Shown: piece after piece, positions 24,700 through 57,259 of the stretch | How the letters are laid out: every line of letters starts with the position of its first letter | Position numbering within the stretch: the stretch's first letter is position 1 | Source: Obrimoposthia wandeli | Lineage: Eukaryota | Direction: 5' to 3' | Assembly (NCBI GenBank): GCA_977020255.1 | Contig: CDROCS010001087.1 | Location: forward strand, 744,001-808,000 | Length of the DNA stretch: 64,000 nt | Made by a program: the position numbers and the translations under genes | Notes under the pieces: model-generated | Told to the model about the DNA's origin: nothing | What the model saw: the letters and a program-made list of their open reading frames with translations, nothing else | The model's database searches: none

Positions 24700-25260
24700 G
24701 TTTTCATGTATCTCTTTGACTGGAACAAACATCATATCTCATATCATTAACAATTTCTATTTTCGTCTGCCAGGAGTTGTGATTTGAAGTCATCAATACG
24801 CGATATCGGAAACATACTACAGGTCTCGAAAAGTCGTTTGCACCAGAAAGATTCTCTTAAGTAGGTGGATGTGTCCGGTCTAATCCACACCCCTCCCCCT
24901 TGTCCTTTAAAACCGTGCATGTGTGTGGAGTGAAATTTCGTGTAGGTGTGTGGAGTATAATTTCACTCCACACACATGCACGATTTTAAAGGACAAGGGG
25001 GGTCCCAAATTTTTATTTCGCCCCCTTGTCCTTTAAAACCGTGCATGTGTGTGGAGTGAAATTTTACTCCACACACCTATACGAAATTTCACTCCACACA
25101 CATGCACGGTTTTAAAGGACAGGAGGGTGTGGATTAGACCGGACACATCCACCTACTCTCTTACCTTCCAATAAAATTATTTCTATCCTTTCGTTGGTGT
25201 ATCGTGGATAATTCATTTTTGACATATTGAATCAATAATGATTGTTAAGTCTGTACGAAA
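24700..25260 (-). mobile_element. Possible Helitron RepHel remnant, interrupted by the mini-Polinton
   Basis: After removing the insertion, fragments FYW..SGA..TFRDL..V..LLADE resemble the Helitron FYLRLLL..GPTSF-DL..GLL-DD region; weak. Confidence 0.3.
24860..25157. mobile_element. 298-bp non-coding mini-Polinton (left and right termini only)
   Basis: Starts AGTAGGTGGATGTGTCCGGTCTAATCC and ends GGATTAGACCGGACACATCCACCTACT, the same termini as 46067-57175; exact 6-bp TSD CTCTTA (24854-24859 / 25158-25163); two subterminal palindromes joined by a ~20-nt spacer. Confidence 0.95.
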
Positions 25261-35148: not shown

Positions 35149-35191
35149 GTATAGATGATCTATTATTAACAAAGTTCATGTTTACCTGCAG

Positions 35192-35423
35192 GATACTCGC
35201 CAAAAATCTACGGCGAGGCGAGACTCAACAACCAAGGCGCTGAGTCCCCGTGCTACCGGACAGTAGATCCCCAGGCCGCTCAGATGGCCTCGTCAGTGTA
35301 CAACCCGGTCCTGGTTCTGGCTGCGCCACATGCAGGCGCGGACATATACGGCACAACCTCAGGAGTGCCGTCACAACATCACCATCACCACCACTCGAGA
35401 GGAGCTTCTGAGCCCGTGTACAG
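35192..35423 (+). CDS. Host gene exon (cytoplasmic tail)
   Basis: cctgcag acceptor, gtgagt donor; phase 1 to 2; (G)YSPKIYGEARLNNQGAESPCY...HHHHHHSRGASEPVY(S) with no stop. Confidence 0.8.
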
Positions 35424-35593
35424 GTGAGTGAAAATTCCTTGTACGGACACAGGTACAGGGATAGGAGAATGAAATCACCTAAAACACGAATTGTAAGATT
35501 CAAAATCATGTCAATACAGATGTGTCTATTTAAGGAATAATTACAAAATTAATAATACCTCAATTAACTCGCCTGAAGCTGCGGTTCCGACAG

Positions 35594-36018
35594 CAGATAT
35601 TCGAATCTGAGCTCGGTGGACCGCGGCTCTCTAAGTCCAGAGCCACGCTTCTTCCCGAGCTCCGTCTCCTATTATCAGCAAGCGGTAGCCCCCGGTGGGG
35701 GCTCATCCACGATGCGCCTGTGTGCAACAACCAAGCGACAGCAGCAGCAGCATCAGCAGCAGCAACAACAACAACAACAGCCGCAGCAGCATGGAGTTTC
35801 ACCTGCAGTCGGTCCCGGTCAACCGGGAGCGGTGATCGTCAACTTTCACTCGCCACGACACCACAACAACCCCGACAGCGCGGTAGCAGAAGATGTCCAT
35901 CTCAACAGCCGCACGCTACCGCGTTCTTCTTCACTGGCGCGCTTCTACGAGAAGAACAACAATGTACGGCTGGCCAGTACCAGTCATCACGCAGGCTTGT
36001 CGGCGACTCCACTCTCAG
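35594..36018 (+). CDS. Host gene exon (polyQ-containing cytoplasmic tail)
   Basis: gacag acceptor in phase 2 continues the frame: SRYSNLSSVDRGSLSPEPRFF..QQQ..RTLPRSSSL..TPLS; donor G|GTGACT at 36019. Confidence 0.8.
35739..35789 (+). repeat. CAG/CAA coding trinucleotide repeat (polyQ)
   Basis: cagcagcagcagcatcagcagcagcaacaacaacaacaacagccgcagcag, in frame with the host exon. Confidence 0.9.
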
Positions 36019-36139
36019 GTGACTATGTATCCTATTTGGTAGAAGCTGTCGAACCTGCACTTTGACAATTTCGTTTAGTTTTATGTATATTTATGCACTT
36101 GTTTTTAAAAATGTTTACCTAATAAAAGAGTTATTAAAT

Positions 36140-36324
36140 AGTAGGTGGATGTGTCCGGTCTAATCCACACCCCCCTCCCCCCCTTGTCCTTTAAAACCGT
36201 GCATGTGTGTGGAGTGAAATTTCGTGTAGGTGTGTGGAGTGAAATTTCACTCCACACACATGCACGGTTTTAAAGGACAGGGGGGGGAGGGGGGTGTGGA
36301 TTATACCGGACACATCCACCTACT
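36140..36324. mobile_element. 185-bp near-palindromic mini-Polinton
   Basis: AGTAGG...CCTACT termini as in 46067-57175; a single central palindrome; exact 6-bp TSD TTAAAT (36134-36139 / 36325-36330). Confidence 0.95.
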
Positions 36325-44532: not shown

Positions 44533-45900
44533 TAACTTCTGATAAACAGTCTTATGATATTTTCTTTCTACGAAGGCCTCAAAAACATCAGCAAGCAAAT
44601 ATAAATATAAGTTTAAATATACACGCATTTAATCATTTGGACTTTCACAATTGAATTCATTAAACATTACAGTATCTAATTCAGTAACAGGAAGTAACGT
44701 ATTTAAAACTTCTTCTGATGTAACTTATTCATATGGAAATACTCCCTCGGATATTATTTGGCTATTTGATAATTCTATACTTGTTAAAGGCAGGTTTTTC
44801 ATCTTACTAACTAATTGAAACAAACTTTCACTCATAAATTGAAAATAATCTATAAAATGCAATATAGCAAATCGTGTTCTTACGGCAAGAACATTTCAGT
44901 TGATAATGGTATACACGAAAAATCTTTTTTTAATTTAGATATAGCATGTTTTAAGTTATGTAATAAGATTGCCAAAACAGGAACCTCGTTTAATCTACGA
45001 GATATATTTCATTTATTACAAACAGCTTCTAAATATTTATCAGTCATGGGATCATGATACTAAAAAGGTTTATCTATTTTTGGATGACATAAGTAACCAT
45101 TTTTGGCTGTTTTGTATGCTCGCCAATCCAAAGATTTCATTTTAATACTTTATTAGTGTGAGTATTAAACCAGGGTTTTACATTATATTGCATTAAACTT
45201 TACTAATAAATTTTGCAAAAATAGTTTTAGAAAGGTCCACAAACTTGGAAAAAGTCTTTGCTAGAATTTTGTGAAGTGAATTGCCCTGTTTACTCAATGT
45301 ACATAATTTAAGATCTTTTTATATGTATTTTGTTGTCTAAAACAATGTAGACATTTTTGACACAATTTACTTTGAATGCTTCTTTTACGATAATTTGAAA
45401 GACGATCTAAATCTGTTACTCTTATATAATGAAAGTTTCTATCATTCCGTAACATAGAGAGATTGAAGACTTCATCTTCATGATTCCTAGTCATATACAT
45501 AACATTTACAAATTTATGTTTAAAAAAGATCATAACTTCCATCATCAAAATCCTTTTCATCGTCATATATAAATATTTTAGATTTAATCATCATATTTAC
45601 AACATTTTCGTTCTGTATTTTAACAGTTTTGAAAAGAAATAAAGTTGTTTACATTATTATCAACAAATTCACGTGTAATATAGCTATCATTCAAATCGCT
45701 TGTTACTTCAGCTCTAAATTATTTTATATGTTTTGATGAAGTTGAAAAACGATTATTTATTTTACGCTTAAAGGGGACTTTTCAATTGGAACATATGACA
45801 CTTTTTTCTTTCAAATTATGTTTATGAGATGCATTGAAATTTGCATAGCTATCAATTGAAAATAGGATATACAAGTAGGATATACATAGTAACTAGTACC
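44533..45900 (-). pseudogene. Degraded protein-primed DNA polymerase B of the older element
   Basis: FHYIRVTDLDRL..CQKCLHCF, HDPMTDKYLEAVCN, LLHNLK, GVFPYE and YLLADVFEAF are collinear with motifs of the pPolB at 51362-52695. Confidence 0.85.
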
Positions 45901-46066
45901 TGCATGTTGAAGTTTATAATATGGTTCCATGTTGTCATAATAATTGTTATGAATCGTACTTAAAAAATAAAATAGATAAAGTTGACATAAGAATTATAAA
46001 ACCTAATGTTGATGTGGAATGTATTGTTGCTCAAATGCTGATAACTGCATTGATGTTGATGCATAT

Positions 46067-46350
46067 AGTAGGTGGATGTGTCCGGTCTAATCCACACCCC
46101 CTCCCCCCTGTCCTTTAAAACCGTGCATGTGTGTGGAGTGAAATTTCGTGTAGGTGTGTGAAGTGAAATTTCACTCCATACACATGCACGGTTTTAAAGG
46201 ACAGGGGGGTCCCAAAAAACGTTTTCGCGCCTCTCGGCGCGAAAGGCTCGGGACGGGTGTATATCACAGACTTCCTTGGGTGATGGATGTTAGACGGTGG
46301 GTGTAAGTCGATGAGTGATGGGTGTAAGTCGTTGGTGGGTGGTGGGTGTT
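46067..46350 (+). repeat. Left terminal inverted repeat with subterminal palindrome
   Basis: Core ~145 bp matches 57030-57175 in reverse; further similarity 46250-46350 to 56880-56975; palindrome arms 46103-46147 and 46165-46209. Confidence 0.92.
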
Positions 46351-46516
46351 GGTGACTACACATGTAGACGACCCGTGTCATACCCAAGACCCTAATACAC
46401 ACCACCCGCCCCTTTGTGGCGGGCTTCATTCTTGATCTCCAGGCACGAAAAACATTACAAAAAATAAATTATTTGAATAAGAGGCTCTCATTGGACAATA
46501 AAAGAGGGTTAGTAAG

Positions 46517-48388
46517 ATGTTTGTGTATATAAAGACACGTCCGTTCATTATTTTTCATAAATCAACAATTCCATTCTACAACAACGTTGACCTAGACGAA
46601 GAGACAGAGGTTCAACTCTATGGGGATCTCTCTCCAGTGCAGCAGCAAACGCCACCACCGTCGCAATACATTGACTTACATAGTCAAGACTCATCGGTGG
46701 TGAGCTAAGGAGAAGCAGCAGCAAGAGCAGACCTGTTGGAAGAAGAAGCCCCATTGGCCAGCTCAACTCCAAGAGAACAACCAATGGACGTGAGAGGCGG
46801 GGTACAGAGATCCCAATATATTGACCTGACAAGTCAGGATTCGATAAAGAATTGGGGAGACTGTACTCCCAGGCAAAACATAGAAGCTGTTCGTCCAGCA
46901 ACTTCGGCAGTAGCAGCAAGGAAATCCTGGCCATGGAAATTGATCCCGCTGTCGCAGCCGGAGAAAGTCCTCGCACCAGACTCAGACGAGGAGTTGTTCA
47001 CCGATGACGTTCCGTCGGATGGGGAGGAGGACTTGATTCCATTCATCGATGAATGGATACAGCCAAGTATTGGAGCCCCAGGAGCCAACGAGTCGATGGT
47101 GGCAGAATTGGACGAGGACGAGTTGCACCTGTTCACCTATGATAATAAACCTATGATTGGGATGGTCTCACTTCCTCTGCTACTCCGAAAGCGGATAATA
47201 CAACGCCTGAACCATTCAAAAGGCCGAAATCTCCTGTTAGGAGAATAAAAGCGATGAATGAGGTTAGACATCATTTATTTTAAATGTTTTTAATTTCATT
47301 TTCAGAAACTTCAACTAGATTTGGCACCGTCAGTGACCATGACGGAGAGGCTGATTGAACTGCAGTACTTGGCGAGTCAATGTAGTCAGGAGCTGCCAAG
47401 GAGTCAGCTCCGATACCTAACGTCTCCAGATAATTTTAAGGTAAATTATTAGATATTAAATTTAATAATTCACATAGATGGAGAACATTCTCGAAATGGC
47501 GACGCCTATTCAACCGGTGGATAGGAAGCAAGCGGCAGTTAAGAAACCGCAACGCCATCGGGTCAAAACCCACACTCGGAAGAAGGCCAAGTTGGTGAAA
47601 CAGGCTAACCTGCCCATCATTGAGGTAAAATATTTATATGTTTAAATGTTATTAATATTTTGCAGGAATCCGTCCAGATAATTGAGGAGAAATGGGGAGA
47701 AATTACTCCTTTCCCGCGGAAACGGACGAAGCGAGCAGAGATGAAGAAGGCGAAGCGCTCAAGAACATGTTCCACCTCAATTGGCCATAATTCTGAGACA
47801 GTGATTGGACGGCAGGAGATTCTCCCATCTCCAGTGGACGACGGGGCAATTCTATACGAGAGGATCCCAGTCTCACCGATCGAGATTAGTCCGCCATCAA
47901 ATCAACGACGCGTACAGGAGACATCAAATTTGGCCAGGGTTTGTGAGACTGCATCTCCAACAACCAGCCAAAACTTGAAGAGGGCCTGGGATGAAGCTGA
48001 ATTGGATGAATTCCAGGCGGAACTGGATACACCGGCAATGCTTCCAGATTCGCTAGGGAAACAGGATGCCGTCTCACGTCAGCTTCAGTGTGAGAAGGAG
48101 GAGAAACAGAAGAAAACTCCGCGGGAGAGGAAGACTACTGCTTTTATGTCAGGGCCATGAACATCGGCTGCACCTCCTCCCAAAAAGTTTCGGGAAATAT
48201 TGCCAAAACCTGAGGGAAGGACAATTGCTACAAACCAACAGGTGAAGGCGAAAAAGAAAACGGGCCGTCCAAAGAAGAATTAACCAGTACCGCTTTCTCC
48301 ATTAATACTTAGTCAGAGGGATTTCGATCCGGATGATCCCAATGATGACTTTGTAAAGATGTTTAAGAATATAATTTATAAAAATTAA
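46517..48388 (+). pseudogene. Orphan low-complexity nuclear protein gene with three introns
   Basis: Phase-0 introns 47263-47305, 47441-47477 and 47625-47665 join an open frame (..RPKSPVRRIKAMNE|KLQL..PDNFK|MENIL..LPIIE|ESVQ..); in-frame stops at 46706, 48158 and 48281 plus a frameshift near 47153; true start uncertain. Confidence 0.75.
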
Positions 48389-48605
48389 TTTCATATATTT
48401 TCTTCCTTATATTTATTTTTTTAAAAATTTTAAATTAGAAATATTAAAATACTATCTTTAAGTTTATTAGGTTTAAATGCAAGATAAGTTATAGATTTAT
48501 TAAACTCTTATTTGATAAATAAAAATATATCATATTATTGGATTAAAAAATATCTTAAATTTATATACATAGGTTCAAAATTATGAACCTCATCATAATT
48601 AAAAA

Positions 48606-48928
48606 ATGGAATTCATTAAAATGAAGAGTCTGGTAACGAAGATTGAAGCAAACATCAGAAGAAATGAGAAGAAATGGGACTTAAGAAAGAGGGTCCTCAA
48701 TCAGAATATGTATACTGCTGTCGCGACCGAGTGGAATCATCGGGTGGAGATACAAGATAGGAGGTTAGCAGAAAGACGTCGAAATATTGGAGTGGAATAA
48801 GAAGATCGAAATGGAAAAGAAGGAAGTGGATGAAAAAAGAAGAGAAGAGATGGAGGATAATCGTCGAGCAGCAAGAAAGAGAATCCTCCAGATTAAACCG
48901 GAAGAGGGTCCTTCTAAAAAAAATTAAT
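48606..48928 (+). pseudogene. Small charged coiled-coil-like orphan protein
   Basis: MEFIKMKSL..RRRNI then a frameshift to LEWNKKIEMEKKEVDEKRREEMEDNRRAARKRIL..KKN*. Confidence 0.55.
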
Positions 48929-49068
48929 TTTTGATTATTATTTTGTCTTTATTGATTATGTTACATAGGAGAATTGACAATATATACCAATCTTAACATG
49001 AAAGTACTTTGTTATTTTAATGAATTTTTCGTTATAAACAACGGGATTTGCTGCAAATTTAGATAATT

Positions 49069-49560
49069 ATGCAGGAATATATTATAGATTTTGAGGCTTT
49101 CATTAACAAAAATGGTGATTATATTATAAAAAAATTATGTATTATGGATGTATGCGACGTTTTTCATCCTTTGCATTTCATATTTCAAATAGATATCCCG
49201 TTTAAAAGTTTAGATTATAAGAAAAAATTTACTAATTTATATCTAACTAATTACCTTCATTTATTAAAATGGAAAGAAGGACATAAGGCTTTTTGTGAAA
49301 TATGTATTTTTGATACAATAACATTTAATTTTGATATAGAAATTGGATTTTTTTATGTTTTAGATGAAATGGATGGCAAAAAGTATAAGACTTTAAAAAA
49401 ATATTTTCCCAAATTGAGATTGAATACTTTAAATATTTCACGTGATCATCTATTAAAAATTCCACGAAATATTTGCTGTCGATATCGTAATCATGGTGAC
49501 CATTGCACATATTAAAAATGTTTAAGTCTATCTTATTATTACTTGACATGTAGATAAACA
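49069..49560 (+). CDS. DEDD/DnaQ-like 3'-5' exonuclease family protein
   Basis: ExoI-like IIDFEAF..IIKKLCI, LKWKEG, and C-terminal CRYRNHGDHC..KC; probable premature stop at 49513. Confidence 0.6.
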
Positions 49561-49747
49561 ATTCGTCTAATTCATAATTTTCATTCAATTACAAACAATT
49601 CTTTTGATTGGAGGAATAAAAATTATTTTTTCGACCATTTACAATCCTTCTAAATTTTTTTAATCCAATAGGAAAAGAGCATGTGTGCATAAATTTTAGT
49701 ATATAAGCAAACACTTTCTTCATTTAAATCCCCGACAATTTGAAATA

Positions 49748-52700
49748 ATGACTATTGTAAGAATCTATACTTATTATTTCCTTATTAATATTTATTATTT
49801 CAGATTACTTGTATCCTGTTTCCAGCATATTGTGGTGCTTCAGCTCCACATGGAGGATAGACCTGCATGGAGATAATGTCCGCCTACTATCAGACAAAGT
49901 CTCGAGGGCTTCACTTCTTCGTCTGCCCCTTCTGCAGAACAATGGAGGAAAAGGAGTTTCGAGTCTTCTTCGGTGAACATCGAGCTCATCTATCGTGTTT
50001 CACGGCCAACAAAAAGAAGAGGGATATCGTGCAATTGGTGCGCGATTCGCTGGCCGCACCTGCTCCAATTCCAGTTGCAGTCGATCAACCCGTTTACGGT
50101 CCTGCAATTGATCTCCTGGCTCCTGATTCTGCCCCATCCACTCAAATGACTAACAATGAGTGGATGAATGACATATCCCAGTCAGATTTCGAGATGGAGC
50201 GATAACTCCTGGTTGGAGACCACCGAGGAATTCGATTTCGTCGAGATAACGGACGACAGCTGGATGGATTCCATCAATGAAGATGACTTCATTCCAGCTC
50301 CAAATGTATTGCCTTCATTAGGTATTTTTTATTTATATTTTTTTAAAATTGTAATTATATATATTATTGTAATTATATTTTATTTTAATTTTTTATTCAG
50401 GAAATACCGTGATACAGCCGTCATCCGTTACGACAGCCATGCCTCCCCCATCGCGAGTGCCTACATCGATGTTAGCACGTCTTAGAGGTAATAATATTAA
50501 AAAATATATTTTTTTTTTAATATTTTTTTTCAGCAGCATTATCCTCTACAACAGCCGCTTCTTTATCGGCAAGGTCAGCTCCTACCTCAAATGCAGCATC
50601 TACAACTGCAGCAGCACTTACTTCAGCAGCATCTACTACATCAGCTGCGATTGCCTCAACATTGGCAGCATGTCCAATAGCAGCACCTTCAACCTCAACT
50701 GTTAATATAAATAGTTGTCTTCCCGTTCAATTAGGGGGAGGTTTGTCAGCGACTGTAGGAAGAAAGAGGCGAGGCCAATTTCTTAATAAGGTCCCACCAA
50801 AAAAACGTAGAGAAAACGGTGCTACTATAGAGTATTACTTAAATAATAAATATGTTATAGTTAAGGTGCCATTAGGAAATGAAATTTTATTAAACGTAGG
50901 TGTAGATTCAAATATTGAAAATCTTTTAAAATCAGAAGTGACTAAATTAGGACAGGCTAAGGTTCAATTTTGCGCAACAGTGCAGTTTAAAAATGTCAAT
51001 GAGGAAACTAAAACTTGGGTAATTTCACATAAAGCAACTGTTTTCTATGTTAATTTTGTAACTGAAATTGGAAGAAACCTAGATGAAAGAAAATTGCTAA
51101 TTATAGCGAGTTAAGTAGTGGATGGACTCTGGTAAGAATTCACGATGTTAGCTTTGTTCTAACAAAGTTCAATGACATTATATATCTTTCGTGGAGTTCA
51201 TATATTCCTTCACCTAGATCTCTTTAACTTTCACCTTCCATTGTTAACGTACAAAACAGTGATAACCTTTGCTTTCTGTATAGCGTGTTGGCCATCCTCA
51301 AAAGAATGTAATTATTGAGCACAGAGAGCGTGTCAGAAAATATACCCCTTTTTTAAATGAATTGCATTATCATGGAATAGATTTTCCTGTTAAATTAACT
51401 GCGATATCAAGATTTGAACACCTTAATAACTTGAATATTAATGTATTCAAATATAATACTGATATCTCAATTAATGTAACAGATGAAGAAATTAAAAAAA
51501 AACATTTTGTAGATGTAATTTATAGGAGCAAAAATGAGGAGACTCAGGTCAACTTCATTTTGCTCGAACATAATAAAAAATTCCACTATGCTGCAATTCC
51601 CAATTTAGATCGTCTTCTAAATTTAGATAATGGAGCCTTACCGGTTAGGATAAGGTGTAAGTGGTGTCATAGATGTTTGCATGGATTCCGATCCGAGCTC
51701 TCTTACAGCAAACATCTGACATTATGTTCACTGAATCCTGATGACAATACGCTATATAACATGCCTAAGGATAAGGATTTAAAATTCAAGTATTGGACAA
51801 AATGCGTAACCGTGGAATTCAGGGTGTATGCTGATTTTGAGTCAAATTTAGCATTGCACGATCAGTATGAGAGTATTCACATACCGGCTTTGGCAGGCCT
51901 ATTATTCTTAAGCCCCAATATTACACAGTATCATAAATCTTTCGGTCCAAATTGTATTTTAGATTTTATGTTAAAATTAGAAACAACAATTGTCAAACTG
52001 TGGTATGATCTTAATGCTCATCAAGCAATCATCATGACAGGCATATACTGGGTTAATTTTAATTCTTGTAGATTATGTTATTTGTGTGGAACCCAGTCTA
52101 AGTTAGTCAGAGATCACGATCCTGTTACGGGGCGATACTTGGGAGCGATGTGCAACCTCTGTAACCTTGGCCGTCGTCTCCCTAAAAAACCACGAATTCC
52201 CATCGTGTTTCATAACCTCAAAGGATATGATTTGCATCATATACTTAAATATGCGTTGGGTACATTAAGCTCTTGGGAAATTTCATGTATACCTCAAACT
52301 TCAGAGAAATATTTATCTTTAACTGCATATACTGAATTCTGCAGTTTAAGATTCATAGATTCTTTGCAGTTTTTGAGGGGGTCTTAAAAAATTTAACGGC
52401 ATCTTTAAATGCATGGCCTATCACACAGTCAGTGTTTCCAACTTCGGTTAATGATAAGGGGATTTTTCCGTATAAATTTCCGTATAAATTTGCGAAAACC
52501 TTTGCAAATTTAGAAAATACTACAGAAATCCCACCCATAACTGAATTTCAAAGTGTAAGTCTTCAAGACTATAATGACGCCCGTATATTTTGGGCGAATA
52601 ATTGTCGAAATCTTCTTGAATATATGCTTTATTATATGAAATTAGACATTTATCTTTTAGCTGATGTTTTTGAGTCCTTTCGTGTAAAGTCTTAAGCAGA

Positions 52701-54119
52701 AGATGGGCTAGATCCCATGCATTTCTTTAGTTTACCTGGTCTTTCATGGGCATCAGCAATAAAAACTCTTAAAATTAATATCGAGTTACTGCAAGATCCC
52801 GCAATGTATCAAATGTATGATTATGGTATACGCGGTGGAATGACTTTTGTCAACAAACATCATGTTTTCAAAAATTAATCCACGGAGATTCTGTACATCG
52901 ATATTACTAATTTGTATGGGTGGGCGCTTACTCAACCTCTATCTCATGGCAACTTTAAGTGGGTTTATGACGAGGAAGAGTTGAATAAGTTGATGACAGA
53001 TTTGGCTACTGTCGATACAGTTTCATCATACATCGGCTATTTGGTTGAGGTTGACTTAACAATCCCTTCCAATGTGCATGATAAATTAGATGATCTTCCA
53101 GTAGCGCCTGTTCATTAATCCCCACCTAATTCAAAGGTTAAGAAATTATTGTTAACCCATGAAGACAAGTTGAATTATGTTGTGCATTGGCGGCTTCTTC
53201 AATTCTACTTAAAGTTGGGAGCGAAAGTTACTCGAATTCATCGTGTTATAAGCTTCAGTCAAACCTTGTGTTTAAAGACTATATTGAGAAGAATTCTAGA
53301 AAACGTAATTTGGCTACTAGCAAATTCGATCGGGATTTTTACAAGTTAAAAAATATTAGTCTCTTTGGAAAAACTGTAGAGGACTTGCGGAAACGTATTT
53401 GTCTACGGTTTTGCAATGATGAGCGTAAATTAATAACATATACTAGCAAGTACAACTTCAAGCGTAGTTTTACAATTGCAGATGACTTGGTAGCAGTGTT
53501 ATTAGGAAAACAGAGTATTTGTCTCGATCGACCGAGTTATATAGGTCAAACGGTTTTAGACATTTCTAAACTCAGAATGTACGAGCTTCAATACATAGAA
53601 TTGGAGAAATATAGACAAGAATTCAATTGTGAGATCAAAATCGCAGCTGGGGACACTGACTCTTTCTTTTTAGAATGTAAAAATGTTAGTTTAAATAATC
53701 AATTATTACCGGCAATGTTTAGGGACAACTTATTAGATACACATAAATATCCCGCTAACCATCCTCTACACTCTATGAGTTTAAAGGATATTATCGGGAA
53801 ATTTAAGGATGAAAGCGAGAGACAAGTTTTGTATGATGATTGTATTTTCCTACGCCCTAAATCCTACAGTTTACATGCATCTAATAATACATGTTCAATG
53901 AGAGCAAAGAGTGTGGAAAGAAACAATCTTACATATGAGGCCTACCGGAAAGTTTATGATACTGGGTGTATTGAAAGCGTTGAGCAAACTAGATTTATTT
54001 CAAGAGCCCATCAACAGTATTTCCATAAATCAACAAAAATCGCTTTGAGTAGTAATGATGACAAGCGCTTTTGGGTAGAAAAGAACGCTAGCCTGGCTTA
54101 TGGACACTTCCGAATTTAA
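49748..54119 (+). pseudogene. Protein-primed family B DNA polymerase (pPolB) with spliced N-terminal extension
   Basis: Motifs HNLKGYD and FIDS (exonuclease), YIDITNLYGWAL (A), KLKNISLFGKT (B), GDTDS (C); N-terminal SGWTL..NVQNSDNLCFLYSVLA; introns 49757-49803, 50322-50400 and 50488-50533; multiple stops and frameshifts. Confidence 0.93.
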
Positions 54120-54314
54120 ACGGTTTTCATTTTTTGATTTTTTTAGTTTAGTTTTTTTAAATTTTAGATCACTATGGCACCTTGACTCTAACTTTTTGTT
54201 ATTTCAAAACAGTTTTAAGGATGGACCTTATCTTTGCTGACAGATCTCATTGTGATGTTGTTTTTAATAAATGTATTAAAAATAATTCGTCTTATGTCTT
54301 TTATTATTTTACCC

Positions 54315-54752
54315 TTATATTTTAAGGGATTTAAAAATATAATTCAAAATAAAACATTTAAAATTTTTATTTTTATAACACACTAATCGTTTTGCATAAA
54401 ATACATAAATGTCCACAGTTTCTCGTCGCAGGATCCTGATATTGTATCTTGTTGTAAAATACTCTTCTTCGTCCTTTTTGAATAGTTGAAACAAGTTTGT
54501 GTGGATAATACATTGCAAGTGGATCAAATACATTATTGTCCACTCTCTAACATAAATAGCTATCCAATGTTCTCCTGGTAAATTCGAAGTATGAGTATTG
54601 ATAATGTATCCTCCAGATTGAAAAAATGGAATCATATCAATAGGATAAACTCCATTGAATTTATCACCCAAGACCTTCTCTGTTAATTCTTGTACTTGTA
54701 CTGAACTAAATAAAAATTAATAAATATAAATTTAAAAAATATCTTACTTAAT
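54315..54752 (-). pseudogene. Adenain-like cysteine protease (Polinton PRO)
   Basis: GVYPID..IINTHTSNLPGEHWIAI (His), VFDPLA (Asp) and, after frameshifts, QYQDPATRNCGHLC (Cys); 42-nt intron 54706-54747 near the start; start codon appears lost. Confidence 0.85.
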
Positions 54753-54859
54753 TCTATAATATGACAGTTCTGTTTTTATTTATTTAGGTAAAACATTATC
54801 AAATTCATCAAACGCTTTTTGCCTTATTTTAAGCTTTTATGGTTTTTATTGTATGGGTT

Positions 54860-55409
54860 TCAAAGGTATTTCTGTTTAAACCAATTGTTTTTAGCGAGTT
54901 TATCATCAAATAAAACTCGTATTATATTGCTCTTTACTGTAAACGTTATTTTACTATTTTTCAATGTTAAACATTTATCGAAATATTCACTACATTCCTT
55001 CTGTATTAATTTACAGAAATTCACTTCACTATCTAATTTATAATCTTTTGAAAACATTTTCAGTTCCACTACATATTCAAACATGCATTTTTCTTTCATT
55101 TTCTCTGCAGTTTTAAAAAGATTTATCTGTTTCCTAAGATTAGCCGAAATCGTGATTGATTGTATTGCAGTGATTCGAATTCCAAATGGTAAATTGAACC
55201 CAAGCATTGGTATTTTGCATCCCATAACACGACAATTTCCTAAAATAATTCAATATGAAAATAAAATAATAAAACTAACCTGTAGGAAAAATAACAACTG
55301 TAAAATTGTCAAACATTTCCACATATTGTCTCGGCTTCCATTCATTGAATGGTAAGTACGAAACATCATCTTCTGTTCTATCTTTATAATTTATATTTAC
55401 GAGTTTCAT
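54860..55409 (-). CDS. TATA-box-binding-protein-like protein (divergent)
   Basis: ATG at 55409; phase-1 intron 55240-55279 gives MKLVNINYK..KPRQYV..TVVIFPTG|NCRVMGCK..IQSITISANLRKQINL..CMFE, collinear with TBP QLQNIVST..TALIFSSGKMVCTGAK..IQNMVGSCDVKFPIRL..SYE; C-terminal part does not resemble TBP. Confidence 0.6.
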
Positions 55410-55624
55410 TAGACTAAAATTGTATTCTGTAAATTCTTCTTTATATATGTCTGAACCTGTTTTTTATTGCACATTTCTTGTAATTATCTTGCAAACCTAT
55501 TATAATTGGATGATATATTTAATCCAATCAAATTCAATGCTTTAGTTATATTAACCAATGAGATTCATGTCTTTGTTAGAAATTAGTATAAAAGAATGCG
55601 CCATTGGAGGACAAATCACAGTAA

Positions 55625-56109
55625 ATGCATTCATATCAAAGACAATTATCAACAATGGATGATAGCCAACGGGTATTAAGCGGTGACGAAGATTCGGAAA
55701 TATTTGAAGAATCGGATAAGGATATGTATGAAGAAGTGAAACAGTATTTCAAATACAAAGTCAGATTCTTGAAGAAGGCTCAACTGATTGCTTTAGTTAA
55801 TCCTGTGACAATTGAAAGAAGAAAGTTCAGCTACTATCTATCAGGTATTCAAAAACCTGATTTTCAATATCTTAAACAGAAAATAGAAAAGACAGTTCCA
55901 AATTTTACTTTCAATAAGAACGAATTTTATATCCGAGGACCAGATTTCTAGCATTTCTAGATGACTATGGAAGATATGTTGATATTGATGCGTTTCCGAA
56001 AAAGAAGCAATGGACTGTAACAATTCGACTTTATGGTTACAAGAAAGATGAAATTGGAACAAAGTTGCCTATGTGGAAAATTGAACGTGCTCATATTTCT
56101 ATGTTTTAA
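55625..56109 (+). pseudogene. Putative OB-fold ssDNA-binding protein, paralog A
   Basis: Frameshift near 55950; clear similarity to paralog B; C-terminal WTVTIRLYGY..LPMWKI. Confidence 0.45.
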
Positions 56110-56246
56110 CTTTTGCATGTCATAAATTGTAATCAGTTTTACTATGTTTCTTTCATTTAATAATCAGTTTTATTTATTTAAATATTTGTATCTTATATGT
56201 ATTTTTTTATAAACATTGTTTTTTTAATCAGTTTCCTTATTTTAGA

Positions 56247-56651
56247 ATGGATAAGAGATGTGTAGCAAATTTTTCTCATCCAGAAAGAATTTCAAAAGAA
56301 AAACTATGTAATATATTAAAGAGGCATCAAATTATACGAGTTATGAATCCTGTGAAAATATCAAAAGTGGAGAATAAATATCTCATCGAAATTTTAACAA
56401 CATCTGATTTTGATCAATTGAAAAATATTTTGGGATTTTACATTCCTGATTATGTATATGAAGGAAATTGTTTCGAGCTTGAACCTGATCCCAGTCTAGA
56501 TTTTAAAGATGATCTAGGATATTTGATTGCTCCAATTCTAGATGAAGAACTATGGAATATCTCAATACGTCTCAATGGATATTTTGCTGATGACGGGAAA
56601 ATGCAGCCTCTTTGGACTTTGAGTGAAGCCAATATGTTGTTTTATGTTTAA
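56247..56651 (+). CDS. Putative OB-fold ssDNA-binding protein, paralog B
   Basis: Intact 134-aa ORF; C-terminal WNISIRLNGY..G..QPLWTLSEA; the SSB function is inferred from pattern only. Confidence 0.5.
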   Translation: MDKRCVANFSHPERISKEKLCNILKRHQIIRVMNPVKISKVENKYLIEILTTSDFDQLKNILGFYIPDYVYEGNCFELEPDPSLDFKDDLGYLIAPILDEELWNISIRLNGYFADDGKMQPLWTLSEANMLFYV

Positions 56652-56789
56652 TAAATGTTTTGAAAAATAATTTTGAAAAATAATTTTGACTCGTATTTTG
56701 TTTTTTCTCCTCTAAATTATATAGATCTGACCGATTTTTTATCCTATAAATTCTAAAACTGACATAGATATTTAACATGTAAGGATATT

Positions 56790-56930
56790 CATCACTTTCA
56801 CCCATCACCCACCGATTTTCACCCATCACCCATCGACTTTCACCCAACACCTATCGACTTTCCCCCAACACCCATCGACTTTCACCCATCACCCAACGAC
56901 TTTCACCCAACACCCATCGACTTACACCCA
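56790..56930 (+). repeat. 21-bp tandem repeat (~7 units) in the right subterminal region
   Basis: Consensus CATCGACTTTCACCCA(A/T)CACC; ~3 inverted copies at ~46287-46345 in the left end. Confidence 0.9.
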
Positions 56931-57175
56931 CCGTTCAACATCCATCACCCAAGGAAGTATGTGAAATACACCCGTCCCAAGCCTTTCCAATACAAGCCTT
57001 TCCAATACACCCGTCCCAAATGTTTTTTCGGACCCTCCCTCCTGTCCTTTAAAACCGTGCATGTGTGTGGAGTGAAATTTCACTCCACACCTACACGAAA
57101 TTTCACTCCACACACTTACACGGTTTTTAGACAGGGGGGAGGGGGTGTGGATTAGACCGGACACATCCACCTACT
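56880..57175 (-). repeat. Right terminal inverted repeat with subterminal palindrome
   Basis: Reverse complement of the left end; ends ...GGACACATCCACCTACT. Confidence 0.92.
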
Positions 57176-57259
57176 GCATATTATAATGAAACTGTATTAG
57201 AAGATGTTTATAATCTAGAGTATACATAGAAGCCTAGACAACATTTGGAGTATACTATT

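What the first reader, a model, noticed from the sequence alone, without database searches (positions are those of the whole stretch)
46067..57175. Capsid-less, integrase-less Polinton-like replicon carrying transcription and replication accessory genes
Termini, 6-bp TSD, pPolB and adenain protease are Polinton hallmarks (established). The canonical RVE integrase, double-jelly-roll major capsid, penton and FtsK/A32 ATPase are absent, and every intergenic gap is under ~250 bp, so they cannot be hidden. Instead it has TBP-like, DEDD-exonuclease-like, two SSB-like and two orphan genes, several with introns and TATA promoters. This looks like a linear-plasmid-like or satellite lineage that self-replicates and borrows integrase (and perhaps capsid) in trans. 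It is the best candidate for an undescribed system here.
Basis: partly seen in the sequence, partly recalled or inferred. Interest (0 to 1): 0.9.

Follow-up and report, generated by a model that had tools for sequence, protein, structure and literature searches.

The report
Decayed, gene-poor Polinton (Maverick) copy
This is a real 11-kb Polinton/Maverick-type mobile element with clean ends and no integrase or capsid genes, but its DNA polymerase gene is broken at least six times, so it is a dead, helper-dependent copy of a known kind of element and not a working new replicon.

Summary
The structure is real. The element runs 46067-57175 and has terminal inverted repeats of about 280 nt with perfect 46-nt tips. 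A 6-bp target-site duplication flanks it. [quoted passage not shown] No open frame of 60 aa or more matches an integrase, packaging ATPase or capsid family, and no unassigned space could hold a major capsid gene.

The pPolB has 3-4 in-frame stops and 3-4 frame changes that are not introns. One of two paralogous right-end genes has one break, and the protease-like gene is split over two frames. This copy cannot replicate itself.

No tool supported the labels adenain, TBP-like, DEDD-like or SSB-like.

The same termini flank two miniature elements elsewhere in the window (298 bp and 185 bp), each with its own 6-bp duplication. The family therefore produces stripped derivatives that are inserted in trans. 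An older pPolB relic lies about 140 bp to the left.

Best reading: a non-autonomous, decaying member of a Polinton family. Capsid-less Polintons are already described. I could not test whether intact relatives also lack integrase and capsid genes, because I did not fetch other copies.

The parts
46061..46066 (.). Left copy of the 6-bp target-site duplication (GCATAT)
   Evidence: Read directly; identical to 57176-57181.
46067..46348 (+). Left terminal inverted repeat. It has a 46-nt tip, a subterminal near-perfect palindrome (46103-46209), and about 2.4 copies of a 21-nt repeat.
   Evidence: The hairpin folds at -58 kcal/mol, z -15.
46526..48283 (+). Left gene. It has GC-rich exons (about 46% GC) separated by three introns of 37-43 nt, and a TATA-like motif with a CCAAT box upstream. 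The predicted protein is acidic/basic and low in complexity, with no family match. One probable frame change and one possible early stop, neither checkable without relatives.
   Evidence: Sequence reading; intron predictors; promoter motifs; Pfam and NCBIfam negative.
48603..48931 (+). Short Lys/Glu/Arg-rich open frames with no family match; coding status uncertain.
49069..49515 (+). Function unknown.
   Evidence: No Pfam, NCBIfam or PDB match. AlphaFold pLDDT 38.
49700..54119 (+). pPolB gene. It has a TATA-like motif, a leader intron and two short coding introns in the 5' part, then an intron-free body carrying an Endonuclease VII-like insert. The span matching relatives is 50959-54116. It is a pseudogene with 3-4 in-frame stops and 3-4 frame changes, and possibly one more frame change in the first coding exon.
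54315..54747 (-). It is spread over two overlapping reading frames (at least one frame change), with a predicted 42-nt intron (54706-54747) just upstream. Its identity is not confirmed by any tool.
   Evidence: negative searches.
54860..55409 (-). Two-exon gene of 169 codons with a 40-nt intron (55240-55279) and its own TATA and CCAAT motifs. Open as spliced; function unknown.
   Evidence: Sequence reading; intron predicted; promoter motifs. No TBP or other match when searched exon by exon.
55625..56109 (+). One break: it is split over two frames.
   Evidence: promoter motifs.
56247..56651 (+). Right-end gene B, an intact 134-aa paralogue of gene A. No homologues found; function unknown.
   Evidence: AlphaFold pLDDT 40.
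56790..57175 (-). Right terminal inverted repeat, including 6.8 copies of the 21-nt repeat, the subterminal palindrome and the 46-nt tip.
57176..57181 (.). Right copy of the 6-bp target-site duplication (GCATAT)
24860..25157 (.). Miniature element of 298 bp made only of the family's two termini, flanked by its own 6-bp duplication (CTCTTA).
36140..36324 (.). Miniature foldback element of 185 bp (tip, palindrome, tip), flanked by its own 6-bp duplication (TTAAAT).
   Evidence: Folds as one hairpin at -106 kcal/mol, z -25.
44554..45930 (-). Older, more diverged relic of the N-terminal half of a pPolB gene from another Polinton-like element, about 140 bp from the insertion site.
   Evidence: tblastn with full-length relatives; tblastx is collinear with the element's own pPolB gene.

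Best explanation
The element is a non-autonomous, decaying copy of a Polinton/Maverick family in an AT-rich eukaryotic genome. Members of such families are thought to be copied by their own protein-primed polymerase and inserted by a retrovirus-type integrase that makes a 6-bp duplication. This copy arrived that way, but the integrase must have come from elsewhere because it has none.

Shown: the termini, the duplication, the pPolB homology, the breaks, the absence of integrase, capsid and ATPase matches, and the two miniature relatives.

Inferred: the missing genes were lost by internal deletion from a fuller ancestor, the insertion was made in trans by a complete family member, and the copy has since drifted neutrally. 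Its small genes are lineage-specific accessory genes of unknown function.
For: - Long TIRs and a perfect 6-bp duplication. The same tips bound two miniature elements with their own 6-bp duplications, so stripped derivatives of this family are inserted in trans.
- The pPolB homology spans 50959-54116 in three frames. It has 3-4 in-frame stops that alignments to 31-61 of 61 relatives run through, and 3-4 frame changes with no extra DNA.
- No intron is predicted inside that span, and no homopolymer run lies at the frame changes.
- The gene ends at a TAA where the relatives end, so the standard genetic code applies.
- Gene A has one break relative to its paralogue. The protease-like gene sits in two frames.
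- The TIR arms are only 83.7% identical away from the tips, which fits an old insertion.
- At 11.1 kb it is shorter than the 15-20 kb given as typical. Elements lacking the capsid module are documented (PMC4028283, PMC4405056).
Against: - The element is compact, with no recognisable truncated remnant of an integrase, ATPase or capsid gene that would mark a deletion junction.
- About 5 kb is taken up by six non-hallmark genes, several with their own promoter-like motifs and introns. That looks organised rather than like debris.
- No fuller copy with these termini was examined, so deletion from a complete ancestor is inferred and not shown.
- The protease-like gene would argue for a capsid-bearing ancestor, but it is not confirmed.
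Confidence: 0.7

Rival explanations
1. This is a decayed member of a distinct helper-dependent lineage. Its intact members keep a polymerase and accessory genes, never carry integrase or capsid genes, and rely on a complete Polinton for insertion and perhaps packaging.
For: Compact, gene-dense layout with no visible deletion scar. There are six non-hallmark genes, including a duplicated pair. Genes have their own promoter-like motifs and introns. Trans-insertion is evidently available in this genome.
Against: It rests on a single broken copy. None of the accessory genes has a detectable relative or an assignable fold. A protease-like remnant, if real, has no role without a capsid.
Confidence: 0.2
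2. The genes are intact and the breaks are assembly or sequencing errors.
For: The genome is AT-rich, where indel errors are common in some technologies.
Against: None of the 3-4 frame-change zones lies within 20 nt of a homopolymer run of 7 or more. The 3-4 in-frame stops are substitutions in effect, and all or half of the 61 relatives align through them.
Confidence: 0.04
3. The in-frame TAA/TAG codons are sense codons in a host with a variant genetic code.
For: All in-frame stops inside the alignments are TAA or TAG, none TGA. The genome is very AT-rich.
Against: There are only 3-4 such codons in about 1050. The gene ends at a TAA exactly where relatives end. The small genes also end at TAA. 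The frame changes remain unexplained under this reading.
Confidence: 0.02
4. It is not a Polinton but an integrated relative of another pPolB-bearing group, such as a linear plasmid, a polinton-like virus or an adintovirus.
For: It lacks the integrase that defines Polintons (PMC5499653).
Against: A 6-bp duplication with long TIRs, repeated at three independent insertions, is the Polinton insertion signature (PMC3014272). The pPolB with an Endonuclease VII-like insert groups with a large set of 1150-1400 aa relatives.
Confidence: 0.04

Closest known systems
Polinton/Maverick elements (polintoviruses)
   Same: Protein-primed family B polymerase, long terminal inverted repeats, 6-bp target-site duplication, nuclear-type genes with introns, and several lineage-specific small ORFs.
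   Different: No integrase, double-jelly-roll capsid, penton or packaging ATPase. It is 11.1 kb against a typical 15-20 kb. The protease is not confirmed. The polymerase is a pseudogene.
Capsid-less Polintons, for example the Trichomonas vaginalis expansions and the Repbase entries lacking MCP, PRO and ATPase (PMC4405056, PMC4028283)
   Same: Loss of the virion module while keeping the termini and the polymerase.
   Different: Those elements keep the integrase and so are still autonomous transposons. This copy lacks it as well.
Non-autonomous and miniature derivatives of DNA transposons (MITE or foldback type)
   Same: Family termini and duplication retained, coding capacity lost, insertion in trans. 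The two miniature elements in the window are of exactly this kind.
   Different: The 11-kb copy still holds a polymerase gene and other genes. Miniature foldback derivatives of Polintons did not turn up in the three literature searches I ran.
Linear pPolB plasmids of fungi and plants
   Different: Those plasmids are extrachromosomal. This element is chromosomally inserted with a target-site duplication.

Membership tests
Polinton/Maverick | [quoted passage not shown] | tested here: met
   Relatives pass the DNA_pol_B_2 cut-off. The invariant DTDS and K-x-Y columns are present in the open C-terminal piece. The gene is broken, however.
Polinton/Maverick | Retrovirus-type (rve) integrase | tested here: not met
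   No rve match in any frame of 60 aa or more. One sub-threshold Integrase_p58_C hit lies in the tandem repeats of the right TIR and is an artefact.
Polinton/Maverick | Long terminal inverted repeats and a 6-bp target-site duplication | tested here: met
   The duplication is also seen at both miniature elements.
Polinton/Maverick | Virion module: double-jelly-roll capsid, penton and packaging ATPase | tested here: not met
   No family match, and no unassigned stretch is long enough for a major capsid gene (and the Pfam calls above). Very divergent remnants cannot be excluded by profile searches alone.
Polinton/Maverick | Adenovirus-type cysteine protease | tested here: inconclusive
   No Peptidase_C5 or other protease match in Pfam, NCBIfam or PDB, and no homologues. 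The protein I had in mind is the adenovirus maturation protease (adenain); it did not come back as a hit.
Non-autonomous derivative of an autonomous family | An autonomous copy with the same termini exists in the same genome | not tested
   This needs other copies from the host assembly.
TATA-binding protein family | Match to the TBP domain | tested here: not met
   Searched exon by exon with Pfam at E up to 10 and with PDB phmmer at E up to 10; no TBP hit.
DEDD 3'-5' exonucleases | Match to an exonuclease family or fold | tested here: not met
   The AlphaFold model was unusable, pLDDT 38.
Single-strand DNA-binding (OB-fold) proteins | Match to an SSB family or fold | tested here: inconclusive
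   No sequence match. The model was unusable, pLDDT 40, so the fold is undetermined.

The most novel reading that the evidence does not exclude
The intact relatives of this copy form a Polinton-derived satellite lineage. It would keep its own protein-primed polymerase and a private set of small nuclear-expressed genes, including a duplicated pair, and would never carry integrase or capsid genes. It would depend on complete Polintons with matching termini for insertion.
Probability: 0.18. Interest if true: 0.55.

Novelty: new member of a known kind. Interest (0 to 1): 0.3.

Why it matters
As it stands, this is an annotation result: a dead Polinton copy, two miniature derivatives and an older relic within 64 kb. 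It shows that the family was active in this genome and that it sheds stripped, trans-inserted forms. The miniature foldback derivatives and the six unassignable genes are modestly interesting to people who study Polintons. If many copies turned out to share this exact reduced gene set, it would document a helper-dependent polymerase-bearing satellite of Polintons. That would be a step between self-sufficient elements and plasmid-like replicons.

Tried and rejected
- **Single-sequence and profile PDB searches.** Queries were the pPolB pieces, the protease-like pieces and the small ORFs. Nothing meaningful came back.
- **Word-based homologue searches.** The 134-aa gene and the protease-like piece gave no hits.
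- **AlphaFold.** The models of the 134-aa and 148-aa ORFs had pLDDT 40 and 38. I did not run fold search, because matches to such models are meaningless.
- **Rfam and tRNA scans of the window.** Both were empty.
- **Naming the host.** Host ORFs gave no informative family and cluster look-ups gave no taxon. The host stays unidentified.
- **Introns as the cause of the pPolB frame changes.** Rejected, because no extra DNA sits at the junctions and no intron is predicted there.
- **A variant genetic code.** Rejected.
- **Homopolymer assembly errors.** Rejected.
- **An Integrase_p58_C hit.** Rejected as an artefact of the TIR tandem repeats.
- **The first junction test.** The 'bridged by an intron' count was flawed: it required no stops across whole alignments, which could not hold once stops lay inside them. 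One search replaced it.
Full report
**What is there.** The element runs from 46067 to 57175.
- Its ends are inverted repeats of about 280-290 nt. The outer 46 nt are perfectly complementary, and the arms are 83.7% identical overall with seven gaps.
- Each arm holds a near-perfect subterminal palindrome, which folds at -58 kcal/mol, z -15. Each also holds copies of a 21-nt repeat, about 2.4 on the left and 6.8 on the right.
- The hexamer GCATAT flanks both ends.
- The host DNA is 23-32% GC. The left 2 kb of the element is 46-47% GC.

**The family in the window.** The first 32 nt of the tip occur six times in the window against zero expected.
- Besides the two ends of the 11-kb copy, they bound two miniature elements: 24860-25157 (298 bp, flanked by CTCTTA) and 36140-36324 (185 bp, flanked by TTAAAT).
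- The miniatures share only the terminal 140-150 nt with the large copy, at 92-97% identity for the best-matching arm.
- The 185-bp one folds into a single hairpin at -106 kcal/mol, z -25.
- That makes three independent insertions with 6-bp duplications, two of which have no coding capacity. Insertion in trans is therefore a normal event for this family.
- An older pPolB relic lies on the minus strand at 44554-45930, about 140 bp left of the insertion site.

**The polymerase.**
- Pfam gives only weak, collinear DNA_pol_B_2 hits to two open pieces, plus a weak Endonuclease_7 hit.
- Homologue searches are decisive. The N-terminal open piece finds 84 proteins, best E 5.8e-70, several annotated with PF03175 and PF02945. 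The C-terminal open piece finds 4805 proteins, best E 2.8e-90, most full-length relatives being 1150-1400 aa.
- Among six relatives scanned, two pass the DNA_pol_B_2 cut-off and four of the six hit Endonuclease_7, three of them above its cut-off.
- In an alignment of 30 sequences, the invariant columns include the DTDS and K-x-Y positions, and this copy has them.
- A profile of that alignment found no solved structure.
- The closest relatives are 42-58% identical and come from unnamed environmental or run-level assemblies.

**The polymerase is broken.**
- Alignment of 61 full-length relatives to the element covers 50959-54116 in three reading frames.
- Three in-frame stops lie inside the alignments of all 61 relatives, and a fourth inside 31 of them.
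- There are three to four frame changes, each with no extra DNA between the aligned blocks. They are small insertions or deletions, not introns.
- Two generic intron predictors, run over the whole element without regard to the breaks, find no intron in this span.
- None of the frame-change zones is near a homopolymer run of 7 or more.
- The gene ends at a TAA where the relatives end, so the standard code applies.
- That gives at least six breaks. A further frame change in the first coding exon is possible but cannot be checked.

**Gene models.**
- Short AT-rich GT..AG introns are predicted in the left gene. Two were found by script and a third of 37 nt by reading.
- More are predicted in the 5' part of the polymerase gene: a leader intron plus coding introns of 79 and 46 nt. 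The phases I worked out from the frame coordinates link three open exons into the polymerase body.
- One intron splits the minus-strand gene at 54860-55409 (40 nt), and one lies just upstream of the protease-like ORF (42 nt).
- TATA-like motifs with CCAAT boxes 20-120 nt upstream precede the left gene, the polymerase gene, the minus-strand gene and right-end gene A. Such motifs are denser in the host DNA than in the element, so I treat them only as consistent.
- Spliced models were searched exon by exon, by reference.

**The other genes.**
- The two right-end genes are paralogues (E 9e-8). The alignment shows that gene A matches gene B along its whole length but in two frames, which is one break.
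- The protease-like gene lies in two overlapping frames.
- The left gene shows one probable frame change and one possible early stop, which cannot be checked without relatives.
- The 148-aa ORF, the 169-codon two-exon gene and the 134-aa gene B are open.

**Labels tested.**
- Every stop-to-stop frame of 60 aa or more was scanned with Pfam. The main ones were also scanned with NCBIfam.
- Nothing matched an integrase, ATPase, capsid, cysteine protease, TBP, exonuclease or SSB family. The sole integrase-like hit is sub-threshold and sits in the TIR tandem repeats.
- PDB searches at E up to 10 gave only noise.
- AlphaFold models were too poor to compare.
- The absence of integrase and virion genes is therefore supported. 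The protease, TBP-like, DEDD-like and SSB-like labels are not.

**Interpretation.** The termini and duplication are those of Polinton insertion. PMC3014272 describes a 6-bp duplication and long TIRs as typical.
- Polintons are defined by pPolB plus integrase (PMC5499653) and are typically 15-20 kb (PMC4028283).
- Loss of the virion module is documented. Nine analysed elements lacked MCP, PRO and ATPase together (PMC4028283), and capsid-less Polintons expanded in Trichomonas (PMC4405056).
- A copy that also lacks integrase is by definition non-autonomous.
- Together with the breaks and the diverged TIR arms, this supports an old, stripped, trans-inserted copy that is now decaying (confidence 0.7).
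- The main rival holds that intact relatives share this reduced gene set as a helper-dependent lineage (0.2). One copy cannot exclude it. The compact layout with no visible deletion scar is the best argument for it.

That census is the decisive test and is listed as descriptive future work.

Noticed in passing
window 24860-25157 and 36140-36324: Two miniature elements (298 and 185 bp) are made only of the Polinton family's termini, each with its own 6-bp duplication. The smaller is a near-perfect foldback. Miniature derivatives of Polintons did not turn up in the literature searches I ran.
   Followed up: yes
window 44554-45930 (minus strand): An older, more diverged relic of the N-terminal half of a pPolB gene from another Polinton-like element, about 140 bp from where the 11-kb copy inserted. 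This suggests clustered or repeated insertion in the region.
   Followed up: partly
window 49700-54119, between the first two exonuclease motifs of the polymerase: The polymerase carries an Endonuclease VII-like (His-Me finger) insert. Most of the relatives scanned share it (4 of 6, three above the family's cut-off), so it is a clade feature, not an oddity of this copy.
   Followed up: partly
window 46067-48300 versus 48300-57175: Composition is split within the element. The left gene and the 5' exons of the polymerase gene are 40-50% GC, like the host's exons, while the other genes are 25-35% GC. Whether the left gene was captured from the host could not be tested.
   Followed up: no
window 35170-36062 (plus strand): Probable host exons at 56-58% GC, encoding His- and Gln-rich low-complexity protein, separated by an AT-rich intron. 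The 185-bp miniature element sits about 80 bp downstream of the end of that open frame. No informative family match, so the host stays unidentified.
   Followed up: partly
window 46296-46349 and 56790-56951: The 21-nt subterminal repeat is present in about 2.4 copies in the left arm and 6.8 in the right, so the two TIR arms are unequal inside. These may be protein-binding sites.
   Followed up: no
window 55447-55587: A short divergent intergenic region carries TATA-like motifs on both strands and shared CCAAT boxes between the minus-strand two-exon gene and right-end gene A. It looks like a bidirectional promoter.
   Followed up: no
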